DNA of 63,146 nucleotides, filler included, from Octopus bimaculoides (Eukaryota): NCBI RefSeq assembly GCF_001194135.2. It is 5 parts of 4 records of this genome, joined end to end, with 100 filler letters (N's around TTAATTAATTAA, not from the genome) between each part and the next. Parts side by side here need not be neighbours in the genome. Positions count along the whole stretch, not along the records: positions 31,110 to 48,736 come from NC_068983.1; 4 more parts are not named here. The stretch is one strand, 5' to 3'. The position numbers were made by a program, and so were the translations under genes. The notes beneath the pieces were generated by a model. That model saw nothing but the letters and a program-made list of their open reading frames with translations. It made no database searches and was not told where the DNA came from. Below, in pieces: positions 31,600-48,620 of this stretch (position 1 is its first letter; each line of letters begins with the position of its first letter).

Positions 31600-32049
31600 C
31601 GCACACACACACACACGCACACACACATATATGTTCAAATATACCTATGTTCATTATATATGTGTGTGTGTGTGCTTGTGTGTACATAGGTGATCTTTTT
31701 GAACCCCGAAGAAGTGAAACTATAAAATAGTATGAATGTAGCAATTTCTTTGACATTAAACAACAGGTTTTGGAGATTCCCATCAACTTATTGGTTTGAC
31801 AGAAACATATATGTAGGTTCTTCTTATGTCTTTTCTTAACTTTTTGAGCTTTCAGCTTCCAGTTTTTGTTTACTATTTTACTCTTTTTTACTTGTTTCAG
31901 TCACTTGGTTTTAAATTGAATTAATATTCAATTTATCACCCTATCTATCNNNNNNNNNNNNNNNNNNNNNNNNNNNNNNNNNNNNNNNNNNNNNNNNNNN
32001 NNNNNNNNNNNNNNNNNNNNNNNNNNNNNNNNNNNNNNNNNNNNNNNNN

Positions 32050-32466: not shown

Positions 32467-34723
32467 TGTATATATGTATGTATGTATACAAAATGACTCA
32501 TTACATAACCTAAATCTCCACACTGACTCATTTCACAAGCTCCACATAATAAAACAACGGCTATCTAGTCCAACGAAAATGCTTTTTCTTGTATTTGTTG
32601 CTCCATTCTCCAAGTAAATATATATATATATATATANNNNNNNNNNNNNNNNNNNNNNNNNNNNNNNNNNNNNNNNNNNNNNNNNNNNNNNNNNNNNNNN
32701 NNNNNNNNNNNNNNNNNNNNNNNNNNNNNNNNNNNNNNNNNNNNNNNNNNNNNNNNNNNNNNNNNNNNNNNNNNNNNNNNNNNNNNNNNNNNNNNNNNNN
32801 NNNNNNNNNNNNNNNNNNNNNNNNNNNNNNNNNNNNNNNNNNNNNNNNNNNNNNNNNNNNNNNNNNNNNNNNNNNNNNNNNNNNNNNNNNNNNNNNNNNN
32901 NNNNNNNNNNNNNNNNNNNNNNNNNNNNNNNNNNNNNNNNNNNNNNNNNNNNNNNNNNNNNNNNNNNNNNNNNNNNNNNNNNNNNNNNNNNNNNNNNNNN
33001 NNNNNNNNNNNNNNNNNNNNNNNNNNNNNNNNNNNNNNNNNNNNNNNNNNNNNNNNNNNNNNNNNNNNNNNNNNNNNNNNNNNNNNNNNNNNNNNNNNNN
33101 NNNNNNNNNNNNNNNNNNNNNNNNNNNNNNNNNNNNNNNNNNNNNNNNNNNNNNNNNNNNNNNNNNNNNNNNNNNNNNNNNNNNNNNNNNNNNNNNNNNN
33201 NNNNNNNNNNNNNNNNNNNNNNNNNNNNNNNNNNNNNNNNNNNNNNNNNNNNNNNNNNNNNNNNNNNNNNNNNNNNNNNNNNNNNNNNNNNNNNNNNNNN
33301 NNNNNNNNNNNNNNNNNNNTATATATATATATATATATGTCTGTGTGTGTGTATGTATACATGGTTGCTTAGGTAATTTGAAGCTAGCATTAACATTTTT
33401 CCCAAAACCACCAACATAAATACATAATGGAATTATTGATATCATTATTTGCTCACCTGATGACAAAATTATATTCCGACTACTTCAATAATTTTCTTTA
33501 CTTTGTCTGGTTAACAATAATTTGTGAAGTCAAAATATTTCTTCAGTTTTTAAGTAATCAATGGAATATGTAACTGCAAAAAAAAATGCTTTCCTGCTTG
33601 GAGGAAGTCACCTGACTGACTGTCGCCTGCCACACCTATACTACCTTTACTTTGAGGTATACAACAAGCATTGACAATCTATACAAACTGACCTTATTTT
33701 GCTCTGCTTGATATAGTACTAAAACTACTGTGTCATATCAGATCACAAGAGATTAATACAAATTTGAACAATCCAGTGAAATAGCAAAGGCAAACAAAAT
33801 GTGTTACACAATAAACGTTATCAGTGAAGATGTTGAAGTGATTTCTATCCTGTGAGGGTAGAGATACTCATTCACTCACTATCTCCCTTATTCACTCATT
33901 CCCTTATTCACTATACCTCACTCACCACTTACTCACTCTCTCTTATTCTCTTCTCCCCTCACTCCTTACTCACTTATTCCATTACTCAATCATCATCATT
34001 TACTTACTCACTAATTCACTCGTCACCACTAAACTTATTTACTCACATATGCCCTCAGTTAACGGGCTAAGTTGATTGCATCGATGCCAGTACTCAACTT
34101 GTACTTGTTTTATTGATCCTGAAAGGATGAAAGGCAAAGTTGACCTCTACATATACATCATGTGACTGTGATCATGTGATCAACCAGACAATCACAACGG
34201 GCTTTGCATCATTTTAGCCATTGAATAATGCCACCTCACTAGTTAAGCAAGCAGGCAATTATTCCCCCGTGATTAAAAGCGAAATCGTGATGGCACCAGT
34301 ACCAGTAAATCACTAAGAGCACCGTCTGAGCGTGATCGTTGCCAGAGCACCAGCTGTTTGTCTTTAGTGCCAATGGCACGTAAATAGCACCATTTGAGCA
34401 TGACCGTTACCAACGTCACCTTCCTGACACGTGAAAAGACATTCAAGCGAGTTCGTTGCCAGTACCGCTGGTCTAGCTTCTGTGCAGGTGGCATGTAAAA
34501 TACACCATTTGAGCATGGTCGTTGCCAGTACCTCCTGACTGGCCTACGTGCTGGTGGCACGTAAAAGCACCCACTACACTCTCTGAGTGGTTGGCATTAG
34601 GAAGGGCATCCAGCTGTAGAAACTCTGCCAAATCAGATTGGAGCCTGGTGTAGCCATCTGGTTTCACCAGTCCTCAGTCAAATCGTCCAACCCATGCCAG
34701 CATGGAAAGTGGACACATTAAAC

Positions 34724-34757
<34 letters not shown>

Positions 34758-34954
34758 AAAAGGCTGAGATGGAGCAATGTGAAATGAAGCGTTTTGCTCA
34801 AGAACACAACATGCCGCCTGATCTGGGAATCGAACTTACAGTCTAGTGATTGTGAGTGCAGCACACTAAGCACTAGGCCATGTGCCATCACTTATANNNN
34901 NNNNNNNNNNNNNNNNNNNNNNNNNNNNNNNNNNNNNNNNNNNNNNNNNNNNNN

Positions 34955-36169: not shown

Positions 36170-37610
36170 AATTGGTTGGTTGGCAGAAACCTAAAAATGC
36201 ACTTGTAACTTACTCTAAAATGTCTCAAACAGATTCAGTAAATATCAAAAAAGGCTTGGGAACATCAGGAGAACAGGTCTGGCTCGGCAGGTGTCCCTGT
36301 GTATCACAGGCTGAGCCCGATCATCATCCTGCCACTGTGGTCAAACAATCTTCAAGAAAAAGTAAAAATAAACATCCTTTTAATTTTGGCTGTTGGAATG
36401 TGTGCACACTTCTTGATGATAATTTCAACAAGAGGCCAGAAAAGCATACTGCACTTAATGACTGTGAGCTTAAGGAATATTCCTTTAATATAGTTGCGCT
36501 CTCTGAAACTTGTCTCTCTGGTGAGGGTCAAGTAAATGAACCTACTTATGGATATATTATCTTTTGGAGTGGCCTACCTGAGAGTCAGCATAGAGAATCT
36601 GGTGTTGGGTTTGCTCTCAAGAATACATTAGTATCCTCCATTGCAGAGCTTCCAAGTGATATATCTGAACGGATCATGTCATACCGTATTAAACTGACAA
36701 AAGGTAGGTTTCTTACCGTTGTCAGTATTTATCACCAACAATGTCCCATTCTGATGAAACAGTAGGACAGTTTTATGATGATCTAGCACAGTTATTGAGG
36801 AGAGTACCAATTTCTGACAAGCTGGTCATATTGGGATATTTCAATGCAAGAGTTGCAAAGAATTACGTTTCATGGCCTGTTTAAGGTTGACATGGGATTG
36901 GAAATGTAATAAAAATGGCATAGATCTTTTGATGCTTTGTACTGAGATAATCTGGTTGTTACCAACACTCTGCTTAAGCAGAAAAATAAATATAAAACCA
37001 CCTGGATGCACCTAAGATCTAAGCACTGGTATCTCAGGTTATATTCTGATTAGAAAACATGATTTGAAAGATGTTTTTAGTGTTCGGGCTATGAGAGGAG
37101 CAGAGAGCTGGACTGACCATCGTCTAGTGCGTGGAAAAATAGATTCTTCAATAATGACTAAAAATCGACATTCTGGTCCTAAGGTACTCAAAAAGTTAAA
37201 TGTTGCAAACTTTAAATTATCAAGATTCCATGATGCTATAGAAAGTATCAATCTTGACTGAAACAATCAATGGGAAAATTTCAAAACAAAAGTATTTCAG
37301 GTTATAAGTTCGTCAGTGGGATTTAAATCATGTAAGTCCAGTGACTGATTCTCAGATAGATCAGCAGAAATTCATGATCTACTTTTAGAAAAACAAAACT
37401 TAGGCAATACACTTCTTTCTCAGTCCTTGAACCCCAACACAAACGAAACTTGCAGAAAGCTTAAAAGGGAAAGTGCAGACTGCTCTAAGGAAAATGAAAC
37501 AGGAATGGTGGAATGATAGAGCAAAAGGGGCACAAGAAGCAGCTGATAGAAATGATGCCAAAGGTTTGTACTCTTATGTTAAGGAGGTATATGGCCCAAC
37601 TCCCCAATGA
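36170..37610 (+). mobile_element. RTE-clade LINE 5' fragment (APE endonuclease), decayed
   Basis: FGCWNVCTL, VALSETCLSGEG, SGVGFA, SERIMSYR, YKTTWMH and WTDHRLV motifs, with frameshifts. Confidence 0.88.
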
Positions 37611-40087
37611 CTGACACCGCTTCTATTCATAAGCACTGAGTAGAATAAACCATGCATTATTTTGTAGCTTCAAAATTTCTATGGAATGTTTGTATACTTT
37701 TAGAATGACATTATAGGGTAGATGTGAGAGGTTGGATTTAGGCCAGATATGGTTGTATTAAATATTAAAAGGTTAAAGACACAAGTTCAGCTAGAATGAA
37801 ATGGTATCTGTTAGTGCATGATAGATAGTGAGGCTGTCTTATGAATGCAGTGGAGTATTGTGCTGTGTATGGGGTGATAAAATGCATGAGTAGATGTGAG
37901 AAACTTGGATGAAATGTGATGAGTTTGCAGTGATAGAGTCGTGGGAGACTGTGTATTTATAAGTGATAAAACATCATCATATAATAATTCTGCTTGTCGT
38001 TGCGTGACTTAGCCCTTTGGTAATGCTTTCACATGATAAGAGGAAAAGAGGGAGAAAGAAAAGGAGGAGAGAGAAAAAGAGGGAGAGAGAAGTGTCCATG
38101 ACATGAAGTAAAGGGAATGTAATTGTAATGCTTTCACATGATTAGTTGAAGTGAAAGAGAGGAGAAAGAAAAAGGACAGAGAAAAAGAGGATAAAGTGAA
38201 GAGTGAGACAGAAAGAGGTTGAAAGAAAAAGAGGAAGAGAGAAGCATCTATGACATGAAGTAGGGGGAACATAATATTTATGACATGGTTAACAAAGTCA
38301 GTTGAAGGTAGAGGAGGAGAGTTAAAAATATAACTTTAGCAGAGGGGTGATGTTCTGATGGCAAGGTCAAAGGCACAGAGAAGGGGGAAAGAGAGGAGAG
38401 AGGGAGATGACGATGATGGTGGTGGTGGAGAGGGTGATGGTAGTGATTGGGTAGTGAGAAGTGTATTTTTTTTTAATTGAACTAAGTTTTTTATATCACC
38501 TATCACTTAATGTATGCACATAAGTGCAATTCCGTGAAATATTTATGCTTATTTACGAAGCAGATATATGCAATTTAATTAAAGGTTGTATCATATGTTC
38601 AGGATATTTTTTTTTGTTTATGGGTGAAAATGGAAAAATAAGAGTGAATATTTTATTTTATGAGTGCTGTGTATTAAGTCGATAAAATTGTGCATAAAGT
38701 ATATAAAGTGTATATATAAAGTGCATCAAGTAATCATTGTATTCCAATTTCTTTCACTTTGAGTAACAGATGAGCAACTATCTTTCCATACAAACACAAC
38801 ACAGGTTATGCTTTCAGGCTTTTTGGATAAAGTTTTCAGAAATAACCCAATAAGTTTACCATGAAATATTCACGGGTCCTGCTAGTAGTGTATTATTGGT
38901 ATTCCACAGATTATTCTATCTTATGACATATACTAAAATGGTAAACATTTGCAAATCAGTTGTTAAAGCTATAAAAGATATATAAAACTTCAGTAATATC
39001 AATATAAAATTTTGGAGATTATTGAATTATAGATGCATTATCTCAAAATTTCTCTTTTATTAAAATGATACAATTTTGGTAACTTCAATTTGTATATGAA
39101 ATAATTTACACATAATAGCCTTGAGACATTGACTTGTAATCACTTCTGTCAGCTGAGGCTAAACATATACATACATATACAAACAGCATACTGCTTGCCT
39201 CCTTCCTGATCTTTTCATCCTAAGAACCATGGGAAAATTTTGTGGATGTCACCTTGTTAACCTATAATTCTGACTACCCCATGGCCCCAGCAGACTAAAT
39301 GGAAAAGGGGTTACTGCAGAGGATGGTAAGAGAGAAGCACTGGAACAGCCACTCTGACTTACAGGGCTTCCATTTATAGATAGTCATCTCTGTCCCCAAA
39401 GTGGTGGGCAAGGATATAGTCCAGGGGCCAAGAACGCTGGAGGTCTCCACTGCTTCAGGCTCAACTATAAACCTGTCAGAGAGTGACTGATACTATGACA
39501 ATAGTTTATTAAAAAAAAAAAAAACAAGTGGTTAACACACTTAATCACTATTCTTTTGAATGGATATACTTCATCAGACTGAGAAAAAAAAAAGAAAATT
39601 AATCCCAAACCACATTACATAGAAATCCCGAGATACTTCAGCGAAAACCATGTCATTGTATAAAGTAACAGTAAATTTAGATCTTTCTAAATAAAAATAA
39701 TTCCTGTTGAAACTATTAGTACAATCACCACTTATTTAAATAATGCTGTATCTATTTGACTTTTAAGATACCAGTTATCATTTTACACTATGTCTCTTGT
39801 TTCAGTTTGGTTGACAACATTATTTGCAATGATTATATGTAACAATTATTTCAACAATGACTAGCCCTTAGTTAAATTACTATCTTTGTTTATTAACATT
39901 GAATGGTATATGCAGTGATGCTGGAGCTATATATATATATATATATATATACATACAGGACGTTTATCAGTAGACAAGGAAGATAAAATGATATTGTCCA
40001 TGACAAAGAATTTAAATGAATCATTTATGTACACAAAGGCAACACTATTTATCTTAAAGCAGAGTTTACTATCTTTTATCCTCTACT

Positions 40088-40435
40088 AGTTTCTATCACT
40101 AGATTGTGGCCATGCTGGGGCACTACCTTGAAAATTTTTGCTTGAATAAATTAACCCCTGTACATATTTTCTTTTTCAACTAGGTACTTATTCTATCAGT
40201 TTCTTTTGCTGAACTACTAAGTAATGAGGACTTAAACACATTAACACCAGTTGTCAAGCAGTGGTGGAGGACAAACACACACACACAGTTACCACATAAA
40301 TGTGAAACAAGGTGGAATACTGTCTCATTCTTCGGACAGTTTTGGTTGAGAACCAAATCTGTCTGATGAATGGGAACATGAAACTCTGAGTAACAGTTTT
40401 TGTGATGTCTTTGTAGCTTTATTAATAAAGTATAT

Positions 40436-40475
<40 letters not shown>

Positions 40476-40678
40476 CTTTATTATATATACATATATATAT
40501 ATATATGATATACAGCAGGTTGTTTTCAATTTCCATCTGCCAAATCCACCCACGAGGCTTTGGTTGGCCTGAGGCTATAGTAGAAGACACTTGCCCAAAG
40601 TGCCATGCAGTGGAACTGAACCCAGACCTTCGTAGCTGGAAAATACATTTTTTATCACACAGCCATGCTTGTGCCTGT
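40088..40678 (-). mobile_element. SINE family A copy carrying a nested hammerhead-bearing insert
   Basis: Family A tail at 40088-40275 and head at 40515-40678 flank about 150 bp of unrelated sequence (40290-40430). Confidence 0.75.
40355..40400 (+). ncRNA. Minimal type I hammerhead ribozyme motif
   Basis: aaatctgt-CTGATGA-atg(ggaa)cat-GAAA-ctc(t)gag-TA-acagtttt. Full core, stems I, II and III, GUA triplet. Confidence 0.7.
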
Positions 40679-41144
40679 TTCTAATGTTTTTGGTTTCATA
40701 TTTTGAATCTATAAATCTCTTTCATTGACAAATTTCTGTTGATGTTGTGCTTTATTGTTTGTTCAGATCTTAACTAAAAAATTCTATAAATGATGTCTTT
40801 TAAAGAAAGTAGACACTTCCACTTGTTTAAACAATATCAGATTCATTCATTATCACCTGTAATGCTACTATATTTGTTTTGTTTTTCGTTTTCCATTTTC
40901 TTGTCATAACATATTCCTTTTTGTGTAGTAACCTTATATGTAGAGTTTATACTGACTTCATGAAAGTTAAATTTTCTGTGTTAAAGTTGTTTCTATAACA
41001 GAAAGACTTACCAAATTATAAGATTACTAAAGAATTTCAAAACTAGTATTTTGGTAGTACCATATAGGTTTTCTAAAAATTCCTGTTTCAAGTAAGTTAT
41101 ATATATATATATATATATAGATCGCTGACCACTACATTTATATA

Positions 41145-41315: not shown

Positions 41316-42324
41316 ATATATATACATGCACACATGCATGCACACACATACATACACGTGTGCATGTGTGTGTGTTAAAACAACTCTTGTATTAACACAT
41401 ACTGATACACTCATAGCACATAGACATAATTGTACATCTGAATACACACATGGAAGAAGACTAAAATAAAATAATACAAAAAAAAAAAATGGAAGATAAG
41501 ANNNNNNNNNNNNNNNNNNNNNNNNNNNNNNNNNNNNNNNNNNNNNNNNNNNNNNNNNNNNNNNNNNNNNNNNNNNNNNNNNNNNNNNNNNNNNNNNNNN
41601 NNNNNNNNNNNNNNNNNNNNNNNNNNNNNNNNNNNNNNNNNNNNNNNNNNNNNNNNNNNNNNNNNNNNNNNNNNNNNNNNNNNNNNNNNNNNNNNNNNNN
41701 NNNNNNNNNNNNNNNNNNNNNNNNNNNNNNNNNNNNNNNNNNNNNNNNNNNNNNNNNNNNNNNNNNNNNNNNNNNNNNNNNNNNNNNNNNNNNNNNNNNN
41801 NNNNNNNNNNNNNNNNNNNNNNNNNNNNNNNNNNNNNNNNNNNNNNNNNNNNNNNNNNNNNNNNNNNNNNNNNNNNNNNNNNNNNNNNNNNNNNNNNNNN
41901 NNNNNNNNNNNNNNNNNNNNNNNNNNNNNNNNNNNNNNNNNNNNNNNNNNNNNNNNNNNNNNNNNNNNNNNNNNNNNNNNNNNNNNNNNNNNNNNNNNNN
42001 NNNNNNNNNNNNNNNNNNNNNNNNNNNNNNNNNNNNNNNNNNNNNNNNAAATATATGTATATATATATATACATACATACATACATACATACATATATGT
42101 GTGTGTATACACACACATATATTTATAGGTATGTATGCATATGTATATGGACATACATATATGCACACACACACATATACATGAATACATATATACACAC
42201 ACACATATATATTTCTAGAACCAAGTGACAATCCTTTTCAGTTTAGTGTCAAGCAATTAAGTGTACTGATTATGATGCTCATGGGTTTTCCTGTAGTTTG
42301 GTCATATGAGGGATGAATTACAAG

Positions 42325-42330
42325 TTTATT
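42325..42330 (-). promoter_or_regulatory. Candidate polyadenylation signal (AATAAA) of the EMI-like gene
   Basis: About 120 nt downstream of the stop codon on the minus strand. Confidence 0.4.
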
Positions 42331-42447
42331 CATCAAGTATTCATATGAATTAGATTTCATTACAAATTCTTTCTGATAATGTTCCGTTATTAGATCACCT
42401 CTGGCAGCAACCTCATTATATAAGGATATTATTGTTTGAGGATCAGG

Positions 42448-42772
42448 TCAAACAGCCACACTACGTGGCCTTCGAACTACTCTCCGCCTGGATTGATGTC
42501 TTGTACGGACTCCATTCCTTGATCGGTCTCTACCATTATGCTGTGTGTTGTGACGTCTACGCGGTTGGTAATTTTTGGGTAATCTAGCATATTCAATTTG
42601 TCCTTCATCTGCAGAAATACTAATCCTCAGACCAGTTTTGTCAATTCCATCAAGTATTCCTGTACAAGTTGTTTTGTTACCCACTGGGTAATGACTTGGG
42701 CAACACACATGGCAGGAGCGCCTCAACTGAACTTTTGAGCACATCCTTATTTCAGATCCATTTGGTTCCAGT
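42448..42772 (-). CDS. Terminal exon of an EMI-like gene: LEPNGSEIRMCSKVQLRRSCHVCCPSHYPVGNKTTC...RRRVVRRPRSVAV*
   Basis: Pyrimidine-rich acceptor (ttcattttccatttttcaaatag), 107 open codons with coding-like composition, stop at 42448-42450, and a minus-strand AATAAA at 42325-42330. Confidence 0.78.
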
Positions 42773-43619
42773 CTATTTGAAAAATGGAAAATGAATAAAT
42801 AAATCATAAAGGAAACAATTGCAAAAAGCTTTAAATATCTTAAATATATTCACATTTACATGCAAAGGAGCCTGTATATGGATAAGTCTATCACATAATG
42901 AACATTTGATAATTAATGAAGCAATAATGGGCATAATATATAGGAGAAGTTAATTTGAGCATTGTGCTTTAATAAAAAGTCTTGTATTCATCACCTAGCT
43001 CTAAAGGATGTGGGACAAGAGGAGTACTGGAGTTTACTGTCAGCCAGGTGTCAAATCTTTTTGTTGCTGAGTTATTTTTTTTCAATGATATTAAACTAGA
43101 AATATGGTTCCTGAGAGTATGTGGTGGTGGAGATGACACTCAATGGTTTTACTTGCTGGCTGCAGAAAAACACACACAAATTGGCTAAATTGTGTAGGGG
43201 ACAGGTGGTCTCTGATTGTTGACACCTGTAGATATGACACACAAAGAAGTGATGAATTGAGGCAGCGGAAGCTATGTGCCATTATAACAGCAAGGTATAT
43301 ATTACTGGCATTTCACTTGATATTTCAAGGTCCTGCTGTGCTACAACTCTGAACCAATTCTACAAACATTCAAATTACTATTTCCCCACACATGCATAGA
43401 GCCACCATTTCAAAGAATAAACAAATTAGAATATAAACTGCTTAAAGCCATAACTTAGTGAGATGAACAATTAAGATTTGTAAAAGTCAATCTTTCTTTC
43501 AAGATCGTTTTTTAAATCTATAATTGTAAATTTCCAATTATAACTAGTAAAATATACTATAATGAAAATGTTTACAATTAAAAGACCTGCCAAAGGAGTA
43601 CAATAAAATATTTTCTTAC

Positions 43620-43730
43620 GTTTGCTGTTTTCCTGTACGAACACATACTCCATTGTTTTCTTCAATGCACACTTCAACTTCAACTTGCTTATATTTTGGC
43701 TGAAGACATTTCACCGTTCTCTCTGTTTGT
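43620..43730 (-). CDS. Internal exon of an EMI-like gene: (R)QTERTVKCLQPKYKQVEVEVCIEENNGVCVRTGKQQ(T)
   Basis: attttattttcgtttgttag acceptor and GTAAGA donor. 111 nt, only one open frame, phase 2-2, matching the next exon. Confidence 0.75.
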
Positions 43731-44544
43731 CTAACAAACGAAAATAAAATGACAAGAATAATTCTAGTGTGATTTTCATTGTACATTTATCAGCTATCTT
43801 TTTCTATAACTTGAACTGATATGTACGTACATACATACATATGTGCAAACGTACATACATATGAACACATACATACTTGCATACAAGACAGGCAAACATA
43901 ATTTTGAGCAATGCTGTCATCGCTTGATTGTTCTCTTAAACATGAGCAGCAAGGATGTACCTTTTGAGTTCTGCTAGTGGGCTATGAAACATTTTGGCCA
44001 CAACTGCTATGGTGTCAGTGATTCGATGCTGATTTATTTATTATTAGACATTTCAATATTTCTCTCATTCTCTCTCCTCCTCTCTCCTTCTCTGTTTATG
44101 TGTATGAGCAAATTTCTCAATGTGCATGAGATGAGGGAAAGTGTGTATGTCAATTAAGTTCAATTAATAAATTGCAATATCACCCTCTTTCTCTCTCTCT
44201 CACTCATTCTGATTGGATATATATACTTCTGTGCATGTGTGCATGTATCCATGTTTATGTTTACTTCAGTGTTAAAATGTACTGTTGCCAAAACAGGCTG
44301 ACTGTCCAGTCAGCTGTGTCCAAATATCACATTTCACTACTAGGGACTTGCTCTCTTTTGGACAGATGTGGAAATAATGAGTGACTCTGGAGAATTTACC
44401 ACCTATGCTGACACATACTTTCATTCCATCATGGAAATTCTCATTGTATTTTCATGTGTATAGCAAAAATTATGACACCATAAGTATTAAGTATAGAAGT
44501 GAATAGATACACTGAGTACAACTATATATATGTTAGCAACAAAA

Positions 44545-45226
44545 GCAGTATTAATACCAAGAGGTAGTATCCCCATTTAAACATGGATGTTCTGTTAGAA
44601 CAAACTTTACTGTGATAGTTGCCATGAGAGAAACTCACCCATTGACTTTTTGGTGCAAAATGCACTCTTGTTTATATCACTAATAGGGAGATAAATTCCT
44701 GCTACATCCAGCTCCATGATCACCAGATCATGTGATTTCAAATTTGTTTGGTCATTTCAATAATGTAAATAATGTACAATCGACTGTGAGAGACATCAGT
44801 GATTCATTTTCCCATCAGTCATATATAAAGTGACTGTGCCAGAGCAGGAACTGGTGTAACAATTACCCTGTTAGTTTGTTAAAAAATATATATTAATGAC
44901 AGAGGCAGTATTAATACCAAGAGGTAATATTTATCCCATTTAAAAACATGGATGTTCTGTTAGAACAAACTTTACTGTGATAGTTGCTATGAAAGAAACT
45001 TTATTGGCTTTCTAGTGCAAAATGCTCACTAATATTGCAAGGTCAAAATCATGTGATCTGGTGGTCTCAGCACTGGAGGTGGTGGAGATTTATCTCAAAA
45101 TACACTAGTGATATAAACACAAATGTATTTTGCACCAAAAAGTCCATGTGAGAGCTTCTCTCATGGCAACTACTGCAGTAAAGTTTGTTCTAATAGAACA
45201 CCCATGTTTAAGAGGAATATTACTGC
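44545..45226. repeat. Three copies of a ~120-bp unit: two direct (44545-44663, 44905-45025) and one inverted (45124-45226)
   Basis: Shared core aaacatggatgttctgttagaacaaactttactg...gtgcaaaat. Confidence 0.8.
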
Positions 45227-45962
45227 TGAGTACAGCTTATTCATGTGAACCAAAGGTAGCTGGATTGATCAACTTAAACAGAAAGAAACTTGGGAGAGAA
45301 ATACTCATTATACTTGCAAAAAATTATGCATGGCTGTATCTCACAAGCCTGAGAAAACCTGTGTCAGATACATCACACCTCACCTAAAAAGCTATAATCT
45401 TGCTGTCCAGGAACAAGAAATAGCAACTAAATATCTAATCAGTAGAAGAAGTATAGATGCCTTTAAAGTTTCTCATTGTGATGAAAATATCAATTGTACC
45501 AAAGTGATACGGAAGGTATCACTTACATAAAAATCAGCTGTCAAAAATGTCCACAAGATACTACCTCCCCATGAGATATAACATTGGCATTAAACTATCA
45601 ACAATACTGTCTGCAGGAATGATTTTTCTGGAGGACACCAGAACTAGAACCAGAATATGTTCATACTTTAAAAAGAAAGAATGCTGGTGGAACATACCAA
45701 TAAAAAGGTTGACTTGGATATATGATGCTGAGCAGAAATAAAGTGAAATATTGATATCTACTGTTATCATTCATCTACAGGCTGATTTGTTTTGCATGAT
45801 TTTTTAGGTATACAGTGTTTTTTAACATTATACATCTTAAATGGACATTCCATGGATGAAATATTGCAGTTGCTTAGCAGATGTGAATGCCTCATCAAAA
45901 ATTTGGGAGAAGAACATTTATGGAGAATGAGAAACTTACAATCTCTTATATTTCATTTGTAC

Positions 45963-46020
45963 CTATTATCATACGTGTGTGACAGGCTACATAAAAGATT
46001 TGCATAAAAGCTGAGGCTCT
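45963..46020 (-). CDS. Putative internal exon of an EMI-like gene: xSLSFYANLLCSLSHTYDN(R)
   Basis: Strong minus-strand acceptor (tttactttgtttttttcatag) and AG|GTACAA donor. Phase 1-2, joins exon 43620-43730 in frame, and supplies the first EMI-type Cys. Confidence 0.5.
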
Positions 46021-47099
46021 CTATGAAAAAAACAAAGTAAACTGAGTGGCATTTTCCAAACACTGTAGATTAGTGGTACAGTGAAAATTTGTAGAACTTT
46101 TCAGGATTCCCCATTTGTACATATGAAATTCAGATGCACAGGCAGACAAATACGTAGACACACACACACACATACATGTATGGATGCATGCATAATCTCT
46201 ATACAAGTTATATTGTTTTGCATCAGAGTATTGGTTAAAAACGCAAACTGCCACATAAATGTTATTTCATGCTTTTATACATTTTTCACTATGCATATGT
46301 GCTGAATGCTTATATACATCTATACTAGTCACCATTTGTATACGGTTGAACATTATTTATTCATTTACATTCACAAAATCTTTGCAAATTTGCAACTTCA
46401 TTTGCATCCCTCATTTCATCCTTGTCTCATATGTAGAGGTGGATAGTGCAAAATATGGATATAGATTAATATTTTCAGTCACAAGTCATAGATACATGCA
46501 TTCACATGCACCCCGTCATCCCCATATACACAAACAAACATAGATGTATGCATTTTCCTTTCTTTTTAATTATTTTATTGCTTTCTAATTAAGATAACAA
46601 ATCTACATAATTAAAATAAAATTAATAACAACAGTAATGAATTTTAGAAAAAGCCAGCAAAATTTCATTGATTTGTTCACAGGTGTGCTGATTTGCAGCC
46701 AAACCACAACATCATCGTCGTTTAACGTCTGCTTTGCATGCTGGCATGGGTTGGATGGTTTGACTGAGGGCTGACAAGCCAGAAGGCTGCACCAGGCTCC
46801 AATCTGATCTGGCAAAATTTCTACAGCTGGATGCCCTTCTTAATGCCAACCATTCTGAGAGTGTAGTGGGTGCTTTTTACATGCCACCAGCATGAAATCA
46901 GTCAGCTGGAACTGGCATCGACCACGCTTGAATGGTGCCTTTTATGTGTTACCGGCATGGGAGCCAGTTAGGCGGTACTGGCATCGACCATGCTCAAATG
47001 GTGCTTTTTACGTCCCACCAGCATGGTTCTGAATCAGGTGGTACTGTCATCAGCCACGACAATGATTTCACTTGACTCAACAGGTCTTCGCAAGCGCAG

Positions 47100-48620
47100 T
47101 TTATTGCCCAATGATTGAAGGGTACTCTTAAATGGGTCAGTTATGCTGCACTGACATAGGCTAAGATTATGGTCTCACTTGGCTTGCCAGGTCTTCTCAA
47201 GCACAGCATATCTCCAAAGGTCTCAGTCACTTGTTATCGCCTCGGTGAGGCTCAATGTTTGAAGATCGTGCGTCATCACCTCATCCCAGGGTCATTCCTN
47301 NNNNNNNNNACATATTCCCTCTACTGCTAGGGTGTGACACTTTTTCACACAGATTTCCTCATCCATTCTCACCACATGACCATATCAATGCAGTCGTCTC
47401 TTTTGCACACCACATCTGATGCTTCTTATGTCCAACTTTTCTCTTAGAGCACTTACACTGTCGTGTATGCACACTGATATTACACATCCAGTGGAACATA
47501 CTAGCTTCATTTTCATGGTCCATGTTTCACTGTCATGTAGCATGGCTGTTCACGCACATGCGTCATACAGTCTACCTTTTACTCTGAGCGAGAGGCCCTT
47601 TGTNNNNNNNNNNAGGTCTTCTCAAGCACAGCATATCTCCAAAGGTCTCAGTCACTTGTTATCGCCTCGGTGAGGCTCAATGTTTGAAGATCGTGCGTCA
47701 TCACCTCATCCCAGGGTCATTCCTGGGTCTACTTCTTCCACATATTCCCTCTACTGCTAGGGTGTGACACTTTTTCACACAGATTTCCTCATCCATTCTC
47801 ACCACATGACCATATCAATGCAGTCGTCTCTTTTGCACACCACATCTGATGCTTCTTATGTCCAACTTTTCTCTTAGAGCACTTACACTGTCGTGTATGC
47901 ACACTGATATTACACATCCAGTGGAACATACTAGCTTCATTTTCATGGTCCATGTTTCACTGTCATGTAGCATGGCTGTTCACGCACATGCGTCATACAG
48001 TCTACCTTTTACTCTGAGCGAGAGGCCCTTTGTCACCAGCAGAGGTAGGGGCTCTCCTAGGCTATTCTTATTTTCGCAGCTATACCCTCAGAGCATCCAC
48101 CCTCGCTACTGACTTGGTCACCTAGGTAATGAAAGCTATCAACTACTTCTAGTTTTTCCCCCTGGCATGTGACAGGAGCTCTTTTCTGCACATTTTCAGT
48201 GTTTATTGCTCCTGAGCATTTTCCACACACAATAACTATCTTCCCAATTAGACTTTCTTCGATATTGCTGCACCTCTTATGTGTCCATAGCTTACACTGG
48301 GTACTATCTTATGGAGTTTCTACCTACGCCTTTTCTAGAGGTTGAGCAGGGCCATCTACCTGAAGAGTTTGTGGTTTGTCTACCTTCCTAATTACTAAGA
48401 CTTTGGTTTTGGCTAGGTTAACCCTAAGGCCCTTCAATTCTAGACCTTGCTTCCACACCTGAAACCTTTCCTCTAGTTCTGATAGTGAGGGAAGCAAATA
48501 TTGGTATCTCAAGTATTTCAAACTTAGCTTATGGAGGAGCTTGCCTTCCCCTCGCAAACTTAAGGACACAGTAATTGTGTCAAGGCCAACAGGAAGCGGT
48601 CCAGCTTCCTAGGGCTAAAC
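47100..48620 (-). mobile_element. RTE LINE 3' part (RT C-terminus)
   Basis: Minus strand gives ELEERFQVWKQGLELKGLRVNLAKTKVL and RRLH.YGHVVRMDE.CVKKC. Contains an apparent assembly duplication. Confidence 0.8.

What the first reader, a model, noticed from the sequence alone, without database searches (positions are those of the whole stretch)
42448..46020. Hidden spliced gene encoding a small EMI-like Cys-rich protein, convergent with paladin
Seen: three minus-strand exons with matching phases give xSLSFYANLLCSLSHTYDNRQTERTVKCLQPKYKQVEVEVCIEENNGVCVRTGKQQTLEPNGSEIRMCSKVQLRRSCHVCCPSHYPVGNKTTCTGILDGIDKTGLRISISADEGQIEYARLP...*. Known: EMI domains show N.C....QP.Y...C...C.R...CCPG(Y/F)...C spacing and normally head large EGF-, collagen- or fasciclin-containing proteins. 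Inference: a stand-alone EMI-like, probably secreted protein with two extra Cys and no downstream EGF array. I do not recognise this architecture. The signal-peptide exon was not located.
Basis: partly seen in the sequence, partly recalled or inferred. Interest (0 to 1): 0.72.

Follow-up and report, generated by a model that had tools for sequence, protein, structure and literature searches.

The report
Last two exons of an octopus gene
Two of the three proposed exons are real, but they are the last two coding exons of a large secreted octopus protein already catalogued as "uncharacterized" in sister species, not a hidden small EMI-like gene.

Summary
They have good AG/GT sites, matching phases and dN/dS about 0.15 against Octopus vulgaris. 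They encode residues 717-860, the C-terminus, of the orthologue of an 860-aa protein: O. sinensis LOC115209349 (XP_029633578.1) and O. vulgaris CAI9720399.1, both named "uncharacterized" or "hypothetical".

The third exon (46020-45963) is not supported. In every orthologue the acceptor at 43730 is joined to an exon ending ...CPSVSQCRCCRWSTQ. In O. vulgaris that exon lies 17 kb upstream, beyond this piece's edge.

The protein is therefore not small or stand-alone. It has a signal peptide, about 680 cysteine-free polar residues, and a C-terminal domain with 12 invariant cysteines. The window holds cysteines 5-12 and an Arg-rich tail.

EMI membership failed every sequence test (Pfam, hhalign, motif spacing, position in the protein). 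The fold could not be tested because AlphaFold2 gave pLDDT 34-44. The domain matches no Pfam family or PDB sequence, and a search of 1.84 billion proteins found relatives only in octopods (O. vulgaris, O. sinensis, Argonauta) and in unnamed contigs that are probably other cephalopods.

The parts
43620..43730 (-). Penultimate coding exon (111 nt). It encodes QTERTVKCLQPKYKQVEVEVCIEENNGVCVRTGKQQT, equivalent to residues 717-753 of the O. vulgaris/O. sinensis 860-aa orthologue, and holds cysteines 5-7 of the 12-Cys domain. The first base completes a codon begun in an upstream exon that lies outside the piece.
   Evidence: Splice sites and phase. tblastn 94.6% to P0002. Colinear with L002 70893-71004. 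Same boundaries in L004 4064-4174, and joined in transcripts.
42448..42772 (-). Terminal coding exon (322 nt of coding sequence plus the TGA at 42450-42448). It encodes LEPNGSE...RPRSVAV, equivalent to residues 754-860. It holds cysteines 8-12 of the domain, the conserved GILDGIDKTGLRIS segment, two N-x-S/T sequons, and a 42-residue Arg-rich tail (15 R/K, 1 D/E).
   Evidence: 96% identical to P0002. AG acceptor and TGA conserved in L001 and L002. dN/dS 0.11 for the domain part and 0.20 for the tail.
42773..43619 (-). Last intron (847 nt, GT...AG). It is about 2.3 kb in O. vulgaris.
42310..42447 (-). Start of the 3' UTR, with an AATAAA at 42330-42325. The true polyadenylation site was not determined.
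   Evidence: Colinear with L002 73625-74031 at about 86%.
43731..48736 (-). The 3' part of the preceding intron (17.1 kb in O. vulgaris). The true upstream exon, ending ...GIAQRNTCPSVSQCRCCRWSTQ, is not in the piece.
   Evidence: tblastn finds no match for P0002 residues 1-716 in the piece. Exon map of L002.
45963..46020 (-). Judged a chance pseudo-exon inside the intron, not part of the gene.
44444..46700 (.). Intronic stretch with no counterpart in the O. vulgaris locus. It carries three copies (two direct, one inverted) of a repeat unit about 110-190 nt long, so it is probably a lineage-specific repeat insertion.

Best explanation
Window 43730-43620 and 42772-42448 (minus strand) are the last two coding exons of the orthologue of Octopus sinensis LOC115209349. 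This is a five-coding-exon gene spanning about 64 kb, and it encodes a protein of about 860 aa.

Shown:
- In the orthologues the protein has an N-terminal signal-peptide-like segment. About 680 residues follow with no cysteine and a strongly polar composition (R, S, Q, N, E, P, T, H, G, Y), and they are poorly conserved.
- A C-terminal module of about 110 residues carries 12 invariant cysteines. It is 62-70% identical between octopus and the most distant relatives found.
- The module is split over three exons at conserved positions. The window holds the second and third of these plus an Arg-rich tail.

Inferred mechanism (about 0.3 confidence): the product is a secreted, glycosylated, largely disordered extracellular protein. 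Its compact six-disulfide C-terminal module is the functional anchor, serving either self-association or binding to a matrix partner. This is how C-terminal or N-terminal Cys-rich modules work in mucins, VWF and EMILINs. The basic tail may add polyanion binding. No experiment or expression data were available to test this.
For: - Identity. A full HMMER scan of 1.84 billion representatives gives P0002 (860 aa) at E=1e-86 and 93% identity, with query 16-163 matching residues 713-860.
- Exon mapping. Only P0002 residues 717-753 and 754-860 map to the piece.
- Gene structure. The O. vulgaris exon map and the 17.1-kb preceding intron are. The window from 44443 down to 35973 is colinear with L002 69015-82366 at 86-92% identity.
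- Selection. dN/dS is 0.15. Exon 3 is 93.5% identical to L001, against 84% in the flanks.
- Splicing. The same three-exon layout is present in a distant genomic contig, and transcripts join the exons.
- Architecture. All 12 cysteines of P0002 lie at 702-789 and none lie between 21 and 701. Conservation is concentrated at residues 681-800. All 12 Cys are invariant in the five-sequence alignment.
- Secretion. The orthologue N-termini are MDWSALLSLIVTISFHYASCE and MVKVDFSLILLTLVFLLGNFVSG. N-x-S/T sequons sit at NGS and NKT and are retained as NGT and NQT in distant relatives.
Against: - The upstream four-fifths of the gene is outside the piece, so an intact full-length gene in this genome is inferred from orthology, not seen.
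- No RNA-seq from the source species was available.
- Function is entirely inferred. There is no Pfam, PDB or literature anchor, and the AlphaFold2 models were unusable.
- The taxon of the Logan/ENA contigs (P0004, P0005, P0007) is not given by the tools. Calling them decapodiform cephalopods is my inference.
Confidence: 0.88

Rival explanations
1. A stand-alone small secreted EMI-like protein is made from exon 46020-45963 plus the two downstream exons, with a signal-peptide exon still to be found.
For: The three segments join in frame with AG/GT borders. The Cys spacing from the fourth Cys of the full domain onward is 12-12-7-30-CC-11-C. This loosely recalls the EMI pattern C-12-C-13-C-6-C-35-CC-7-C, which I cite from my own knowledge of the EMI consensus; it is a lead, not a test.
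Against: - Orthologues join 43730 to a different exon.
- Exon 1 has no counterpart in O. vulgaris, has a weak donor, and is one of 21 chance candidates.
- No signal-peptide exon was found in the 2.7 kb upstream.
- There is no EMI profile match.
Confidence: 0.03
2. A short isoform starts at the in-frame ATG at 43786 just upstream of the penultimate exon (MYNENHTRIILVILFSFVRQTERTVKC...). The hydrophobic stretch would act as a signal peptide and yield a secreted half-domain of about 164 aa.
For: ORF 43616-43786 is open and in frame, and it has a hydrophobic segment after the ATG.
Against: - The hydrophobic stretch is simply the translation of the polypyrimidine tract of the acceptor.
- In O. vulgaris a 1-nt indel in that tract puts the ATG out of frame.
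- The product would carry only 8 of the 12 invariant cysteines.
- The same kind of tract-derived ORF also precedes the last exon (MIYLFIFHFSNR in the window; MLFSIFSFIFVSHR in P0007).
Confidence: 0.03
3. The C-terminal module is a very divergent EMI (or CROPT-like) fold that sequence methods cannot see, relocated to the C-terminus.
For: - There is a loose similarity in Cys spacing, a CC doublet followed by P-x-x-Y, and both low-confidence models are all-beta.
- phmmer of an EMILIN-1 EMI sequence found no PDB chain. No check was made that an EMI-type structure is present in the Foldseek PDB library, and the models were too poor for that search to mean anything.
Against: - Pfam EMI gave no hit at E<=10 for any of five members.
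- hhalign probability is 0.1%.
- The WRCCxG[YFW]xGxxC and NWC motifs are absent.
- There are five extra cysteines.
- The position in the protein is the opposite of EMI.
Confidence: 0.1
4. The two exons are remnants of a decaying or truncated gene copy in this genome.
For: The upstream exons cannot be seen in the piece, and the assembly is gap-rich.
Against: - Both exons are intact, with conserved splice sites and stop codon.
- dN/dS is 0.15.
- They are colinear with the single O. vulgaris locus.
- The missing exon is expected about 17 kb upstream, beyond the edge.
Confidence: 0.03

Closest known systems
Octopus sinensis LOC115209349 (XP_029633578.1, 860 aa), Octopus vulgaris CAI9720399.1 and Argonauta hians GAB1600250.1, all 'uncharacterized/hypothetical protein'
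   Same: The window-encoded 144 residues are 95-96% identical to the C-terminus of the O. vulgaris protein. Exon boundaries are the same, the stop codon is the same, and the flanking DNA is colinear.
   Different: Six amino-acid substitutions, a shorter last intron (0.85 against 2.3 kb), and a 2.3-kb repeat-bearing insertion in the preceding intron. The upstream exons are not visible here.
Longer relatives from unnamed transcript and genome contigs (P0004 1291 aa, P0005 745 aa, P0007), probably decapodiform cephalopods
   Same: They carry the same 12-Cys module (67-69% identity, all Cys invariant), the same three-exon split, and a signal peptide followed by a long polar Cys-free region.
   Different: Their terminal exon reads on for about 330-380 more residues holding eight CC doublets, and they have a Thr/Pro-rich mucin-like stretch. 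Octopods stop after an Arg-rich tail.
EMI domain (Pfam PF07546; EMILINs, multimerins, EMID1, EGFL7)
   Same: Both are extracellular, Cys-rich modules of about 75-90 residues with a CC doublet near the end followed by one more Cys. Spacing of four earlier cysteines is loosely similar (my reading of the consensus).
   Different: - No profile match.
- No NWC or WRCCxG[YFW]xGxxC motifs.
- 12 rather than 6-7 cysteines.
- C-terminal instead of immediately after the signal peptide.
- No coiled-coil, collagen, C1q, EGF or FAS1 partner domains.
C-terminal cystine-knot (CTCK) domains of mucins, VWF and norrin
   Same: Both are C-terminal disulfide-rich modules at the end of a long, partly mucin-like secreted protein. 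The local C-x-x-CC-P recalls the CTCK C-x-CC-x-P.
   Different: No Pfam Cys_knot hit. The terminal C-x-C...C and the CxGxC of the knot are absent. This is an analogy of architecture only.

Membership tests
EMI domain (PF07546) | Match to the Pfam EMI profile at or near its gathering score | tested here: not met
   There was no hit at E<=10 for the window peptide or for the five aligned domains. There was none at E<=1 for the full-length orthologues. As a control, EMILIN-1 fragments found with an EMI query do carry PF07546.
EMI domain (PF07546) | Profile-profile similarity to bona fide EMI sequences | tested here: not met
   hhalign of A1 against A2 gives probability 0.1% and E=0.43 over 21 columns. 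A2 is narrow (EMILIN-1 type only), so this test is weak.
EMI domain (PF07546) | Signature motifs: NWC near the start and WRCCxG[YFW]xGxxC at the end, with 6-7 cysteines (consensus recalled from the literature) | tested here: not met
   The sequence reads SCHVCCPSHYPVGNKTTC. The aromatic residue is at CC+4, there is no Gly, the next Cys is at +12, and no W-R precedes the doublet. The full domain has 12 cysteines.
EMI domain (PF07546) | Position at the N-terminus directly after the signal peptide, followed by other ECM domains | tested here: not met
   The domain occupies residues 702-789 of 860, at the C-terminus, and no other Pfam domain is present.
EMI domain (PF07546) | EMI fold and disulfide topology | not testable with these tools
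   AlphaFold2 gave pLDDT 44 from the single sequence and 34 from the 5-sequence alignment. The best Foldseek PDB match was E=0.5 with TM<=0.25, which is meaningless.
Orthologue of O. sinensis LOC115209349 | High identity over the whole available coding sequence | tested here: met
   93% identity over query residues 16-163 at E=1e-86. 95-96% per exon.
Orthologue of O. sinensis LOC115209349 | Same exon boundaries and colinear flanking DNA (synteny) | tested here: met
   The window from 44443 down to 35973 is colinear with L002 69015-82366.
Orthologue of O. sinensis LOC115209349 | Purifying selection on the coding sequence | tested here: met
   dN/dS is 0.15 against O. vulgaris and 0.17 against L001.
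Orthologue of O. sinensis LOC115209349 | Intact upstream exons (signal peptide, large exon 2, first domain exon) in this genome | not testable with these tools
   They are expected more than 5 kb upstream, beyond the piece's edge at 48736.
C-terminal cystine knot (CTCK) | Pfam Cys_knot match and the CxGxC...CxC knot cysteines | tested here: not met
   No Pfam hit. No Cys follows the twelfth one in octopods, and there is no CxGxC.

The most novel reading that the evidence does not exclude
The C-terminal 12-cysteine module is a previously undescribed domain family. It has no Pfam model, no PDB relative and no confident AlphaFold2 model. It appears restricted to coleoid cephalopods and has been conserved since the split of octopods from the more distant contig lineages, and it sits at the end of a fast-evolving disordered secreted protein. 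The window holds its last two-thirds. If so, it would mark a cephalopod-specific extracellular matrix, adhesive or mucus component whose Cys-rich end is the only strongly constrained part.
Probability: 0.55. Interest if true: 0.35.

Novelty: already known. Interest (0 to 1): 0.18.

Why it matters
The main result is a correction. The "orphan small EMI-like gene" is the tail of a gene already present in the RefSeq and GenBank annotations of sister octopus species, so it is not a new architecture.

Two things remain of some interest:
- The gene belongs to the pool of cephalopod-restricted secreted proteins with no assigned function. Its 12-Cys C-terminal module has no family assignment, so it is a reasonable candidate for a new Pfam entry and for expression or structure work.
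- It is a useful caution for reading raw sequence. Polypyrimidine tracts translate into hydrophobic stretches that look like signal peptides. Short, open, phase-compatible pseudo-exons are also common in AT-rich introns: 21 were found in 5 kb here.

Tried and rejected
- Pfam scans gave nothing. These covered the window peptide, the full-length orthologues and the aligned domains. A six-frame scan of the minus strand upstream gave only a sub-threshold DUF7496 hit.
- PDB sequence searches with the peptide and with the profile gave only chance hits to ribosomal proteins and SMAD MH1, at E=0.18-0.9.
- AlphaFold2 gave pLDDT 44 and 34 on the single sequence and the 5-row alignment. Foldseek on the second model was meaningless.
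- The word-indexed homology search found only the L001 exon, twice. The exhaustive HMMER scan was needed to find the orthologues. Two of its eight hits I judge spurious: bacterial Cna-B repeats (P0006) and a cactus repeat protein (P0008).
- A search for a signal-peptide first exon in 46021-48736 found only candidates inside transposon or microsatellite sequence.
- The in-frame ATG at 43786 was rejected as a start.
- Literature searches for the locus name, the protein accessions, the run accessions and 'EMI domain' with 'cephalopod' returned nothing relevant.
- Rfam and tRNA scans of the piece found nothing.
- I did not make an exhaustive scan of the plus strand for paladin exons.
Full report
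**1. The observation**

On the minus strand, the three segments 46020-45963, 43730-43620 and 42772-42448 are each flanked by AG and GT. Whether each segment is a real exon is a separate question, and the answer differs between them.

**2. Exons 2 and 3 are real**

The word-indexed protein search found only one relative, P0001. It lies on a 934-nt genomic contig (L001) from another Octopus-like genome.

- Aligned to the window, the last exon is 93.5% identical without a single gap. The adjoining intron and 3' flank are about 84% identical and have gaps.
- The AG acceptor and the TGA are both conserved.

The exhaustive HMMER scan of 1.84 billion cluster representatives then placed query residues 16-163 on the C-terminus (residues 713-860) of P0002, an 860-aa protein, at 93% identity and E=1e-86.

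- P0002 is Octopus vulgaris CAI9720399.1 ("hypothetical predicted protein").
- Its cluster mate P0009 is O. sinensis XP_029633578.1 ("uncharacterized protein LOC115209349").
- P0003 is the Argonauta hians protein of the same name.

By tblastn, only P0002 residues 717-753 (window 43729-43619, 94.6%) and 754-860 (window 42771-42451, 96.3%) map to the piece. Nei-Gojobori dN/dS between the window and O. vulgaris over these two exons is 0.15, with dS 0.15. It is 0.11 for the Cys-rich part and 0.20 for the basic tail.

**3. Gene structure and splicing evidence**

The O. vulgaris locus (L002, 83.6 kb) shows five coding exons:

| Exon | L002 coordinates | Residues |
|---|---|---|
| 1 | 10001-10048 | 1-16 |
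| 2 | 46817-48748 | 18-661 |
| 3 | 53588-53761 | 659-716 |
| 4 | 70893-71004 | 717-753 |
| 5 | 73300-73624 | 754-860 plus stop |

- The window from 44443 down to 35973 is colinear with L002 69015-82366 at 86-92% identity. The locus is therefore orthologous.
- The intron before exon 4 is 17.1 kb in O. vulgaris. Only 5 kb is available upstream of 43730 in the piece, so the true upstream exon lies beyond the edge.
- A more distant genomic contig (L004) has the same three-exon split of the domain, at 796-984, 4064-4174 and 10043-11302, with identical boundaries (...WSTQ|QT... and ...T|LKPNG...).
- Assembled transcript contigs L003, L005 and L006 carry uninterrupted ORFs across both junctions.

This is spliced-RNA evidence for the orthologous junctions, though not from the source species.

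**4.

- In every orthologue, the residues preceding QTER/QTRK are ...CPSVSQCRCCRWSTQ, not ...SLSHTYDNR.
- Window 44444-46700, which contains 46020-45963, has no counterpart anywhere in the 83-kb O. vulgaris locus apart from microsatellite hits. It carries two direct copies and one inverted copy of a short repeat.
- The donor TAG|GTACAA is weak.
- With loose criteria, the 5 kb upstream of 43730 holds 21 open pseudo-exons whose phase fits exon 4, from about nine acceptor sites.
- No plausible signal-peptide exon exists in 46021-48736.

A second tempting model is a start at the in-frame ATG at 43786 (MYNENHTRIILVILFSFV...). It fails because the hydrophobic stretch is simply the translated polypyrimidine tract, and a 1-nt indel there puts the ATG out of frame in O. 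vulgaris.

**5. What the protein is**

P0002 and P0009 begin with a signal-peptide-like segment, MDWSALLSLIVTISFHYASCE.

- Residues 21-701 contain no cysteine. They are dominated by R, S, Q, N, E, P, T, H, G, K, D and Y, and are only 12-38% identical to the distant relatives in most 40-residue windows (one reaches 50%).
- All 12 remaining cysteines lie at 702-789. Residues 681-800 are 62-70% identical to the distant relatives.
- In a five-sequence alignment, all 12 Cys and many other positions are invariant.
- The spacing is C-5-C-1-CC-12-C-12-C-7-C-18-C-8-C-2-CC-11-C.
- The window encodes cysteines 5-12, the conserved GILDGIDKTGLRIS segment, two N-x-S/T sequons (NGS and NKT, retained as NGT and NQT in the distant relatives) and a 42-residue tail with 15 Arg/Lys.
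- The distant relatives read on in the same terminal exon for a further 330-380 residues with eight CC doublets, and they carry a Thr/Pro-rich stretch upstream.

My inference is a secreted, glycosylated, mostly disordered extracellular protein whose only strongly constrained part is a six-disulfide C-terminal module.

**6. Is it EMI-like?**

Pfam gives no family at all. The cut-off was E<=10 for the window peptide and the five aligned domains, and E<=1 for the full-length orthologues. EMILIN-1 fragments retrieved with an EMI query do carry PF07546, so that annotation works as a control.

- hhalign of the domain alignment against an EMILIN-1-type EMI alignment gives probability 0.1%. That reference alignment is admittedly narrow.
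- The signature WRCCxG[YFW]xGxxC is not met; the sequence reads SCHVCCPSHYPVGNKTTC.
- There are five more cysteines than in EMI.
- The module is C-terminal, whereas EMI domains follow the signal peptide directly.
- A loose resemblance in the spacing of Cys 4-7, the CC doublet and the last Cys remains. It is a lead only.

The fold could not be tested. AlphaFold2 gave pLDDT 44 on the single sequence and 34 on the five-row alignment, and Foldseek returned nothing meaningful. PDB sequence searches found nothing, and phmmer of an EMILIN-1 EMI sequence found no PDB chain either.

**7. Distribution and literature**

The exhaustive scan found eight proteins at E<=0.001. Six belong to this family: O. 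vulgaris (whose cluster also holds the O. sinensis protein), Argonauta, the L001 exon, and three sequences from unnamed transcript and genome contigs (P0004, P0005, P0007). The other two hits, a bacterial Cna-B repeat protein and a cactus repeat protein, I judge spurious because they match only about 40 residues of repeat sequence at 35-43% identity. No paper in the held library mentions the locus or its accessions.

**8. Verdict**

The finding is two-thirds correct as an observation and largely wrong as an interpretation. These are the terminal exons of a known but uncharacterised gene for a large secreted protein. They are not a hidden stand-alone EMI-like gene. The residual interest is that the C-terminal 12-Cys module has no family assignment and seems restricted to cephalopods.

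Noticed in passing
window 43731-43786 and 42773-42807 (minus strand): The polypyrimidine tracts before both real acceptors translate in frame into hydrophobic, signal-peptide-like stretches preceded by an ATG: MYNENHTRIILVILFSFV and MIYLFIFHFSNR. The same artefact starts the prokaryote-style gene call P0007 (MLFSIFSFIFVSHR). It is a trap for ORF-based reading.
   Followed up: yes
L001 405-863 (gene call P0001): The database gene call reads through the conserved TGA stop as Trp (…SVAVWPDPQ…), and the tool reports 'translates_to_query: no'. A non-standard code was evidently applied to this eukaryotic contig.
   Followed up: partly
window 47189-48033: A 430-bp unit is present as two tandem copies at 96% identity, inside degenerate reverse-transcriptase-like sequence on the minus strand. 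Two 10-N gaps lie at 47300-47309 and 47604-47613. It could be a real duplication or a scaffolding artefact.
   Followed up: no
window 36172-37700 (+): A degenerate LINE-type endonuclease ORF, with frameshifts. Pfam Exo_endo_phos gives E=0.007, below the family cut-off. It is colinear and 87-89% identical with O. vulgaris L002 80769-82366, so it is an old insertion shared by both species.
   Followed up: partly
window 46707-47058 and 34291-34756; many places in L002 (e.g. 43650-43890, 45935-46240, 69609-69789): A dispersed repeat family. It includes a 66-nt unit repeated 2.9 times at 46869-47058, is present in opposite orientations in the window, and has at least seven copies in the O. vulgaris locus at 74-86% identity.
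   Followed up: no
window 40072-40680: Another short dispersed repeat next to a (TA)n microsatellite. More than ten copies lie in the O. vulgaris locus at 70-90% identity, so it is probably a SINE or MITE.
   Followed up: no
P0004, P0005 and P0007 (L003-L006): In the distant relatives the terminal exon does not stop after the domain. It encodes about 330-380 more residues with eight CC doublets, for example CCLTREQ...RYCCNTKRYNGR..CCG and YSCCSNGNYLRKVACCL...LCCRK. Octopods have only an Arg-rich tail, so the C-terminus has been lost or gained between lineages.
   Followed up: partly
P0013 and P0019 (Logan contigs): Two contig-derived proteins end ...AAGRDRTH followed by CKYIF.... This is the point where the full-length forms continue with SQGH, so these look like intron-retaining or genomic contigs that mark another exon boundary.
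   Followed up: no
window 31950-32049, 32637-33319, 34897-34954, 41502-42048: Assembly gaps (runs of N) are flanked by AC/TG/TA microsatellites. The low GC values in the composition profile at these places are artefacts of the N runs.
   Followed up: yes
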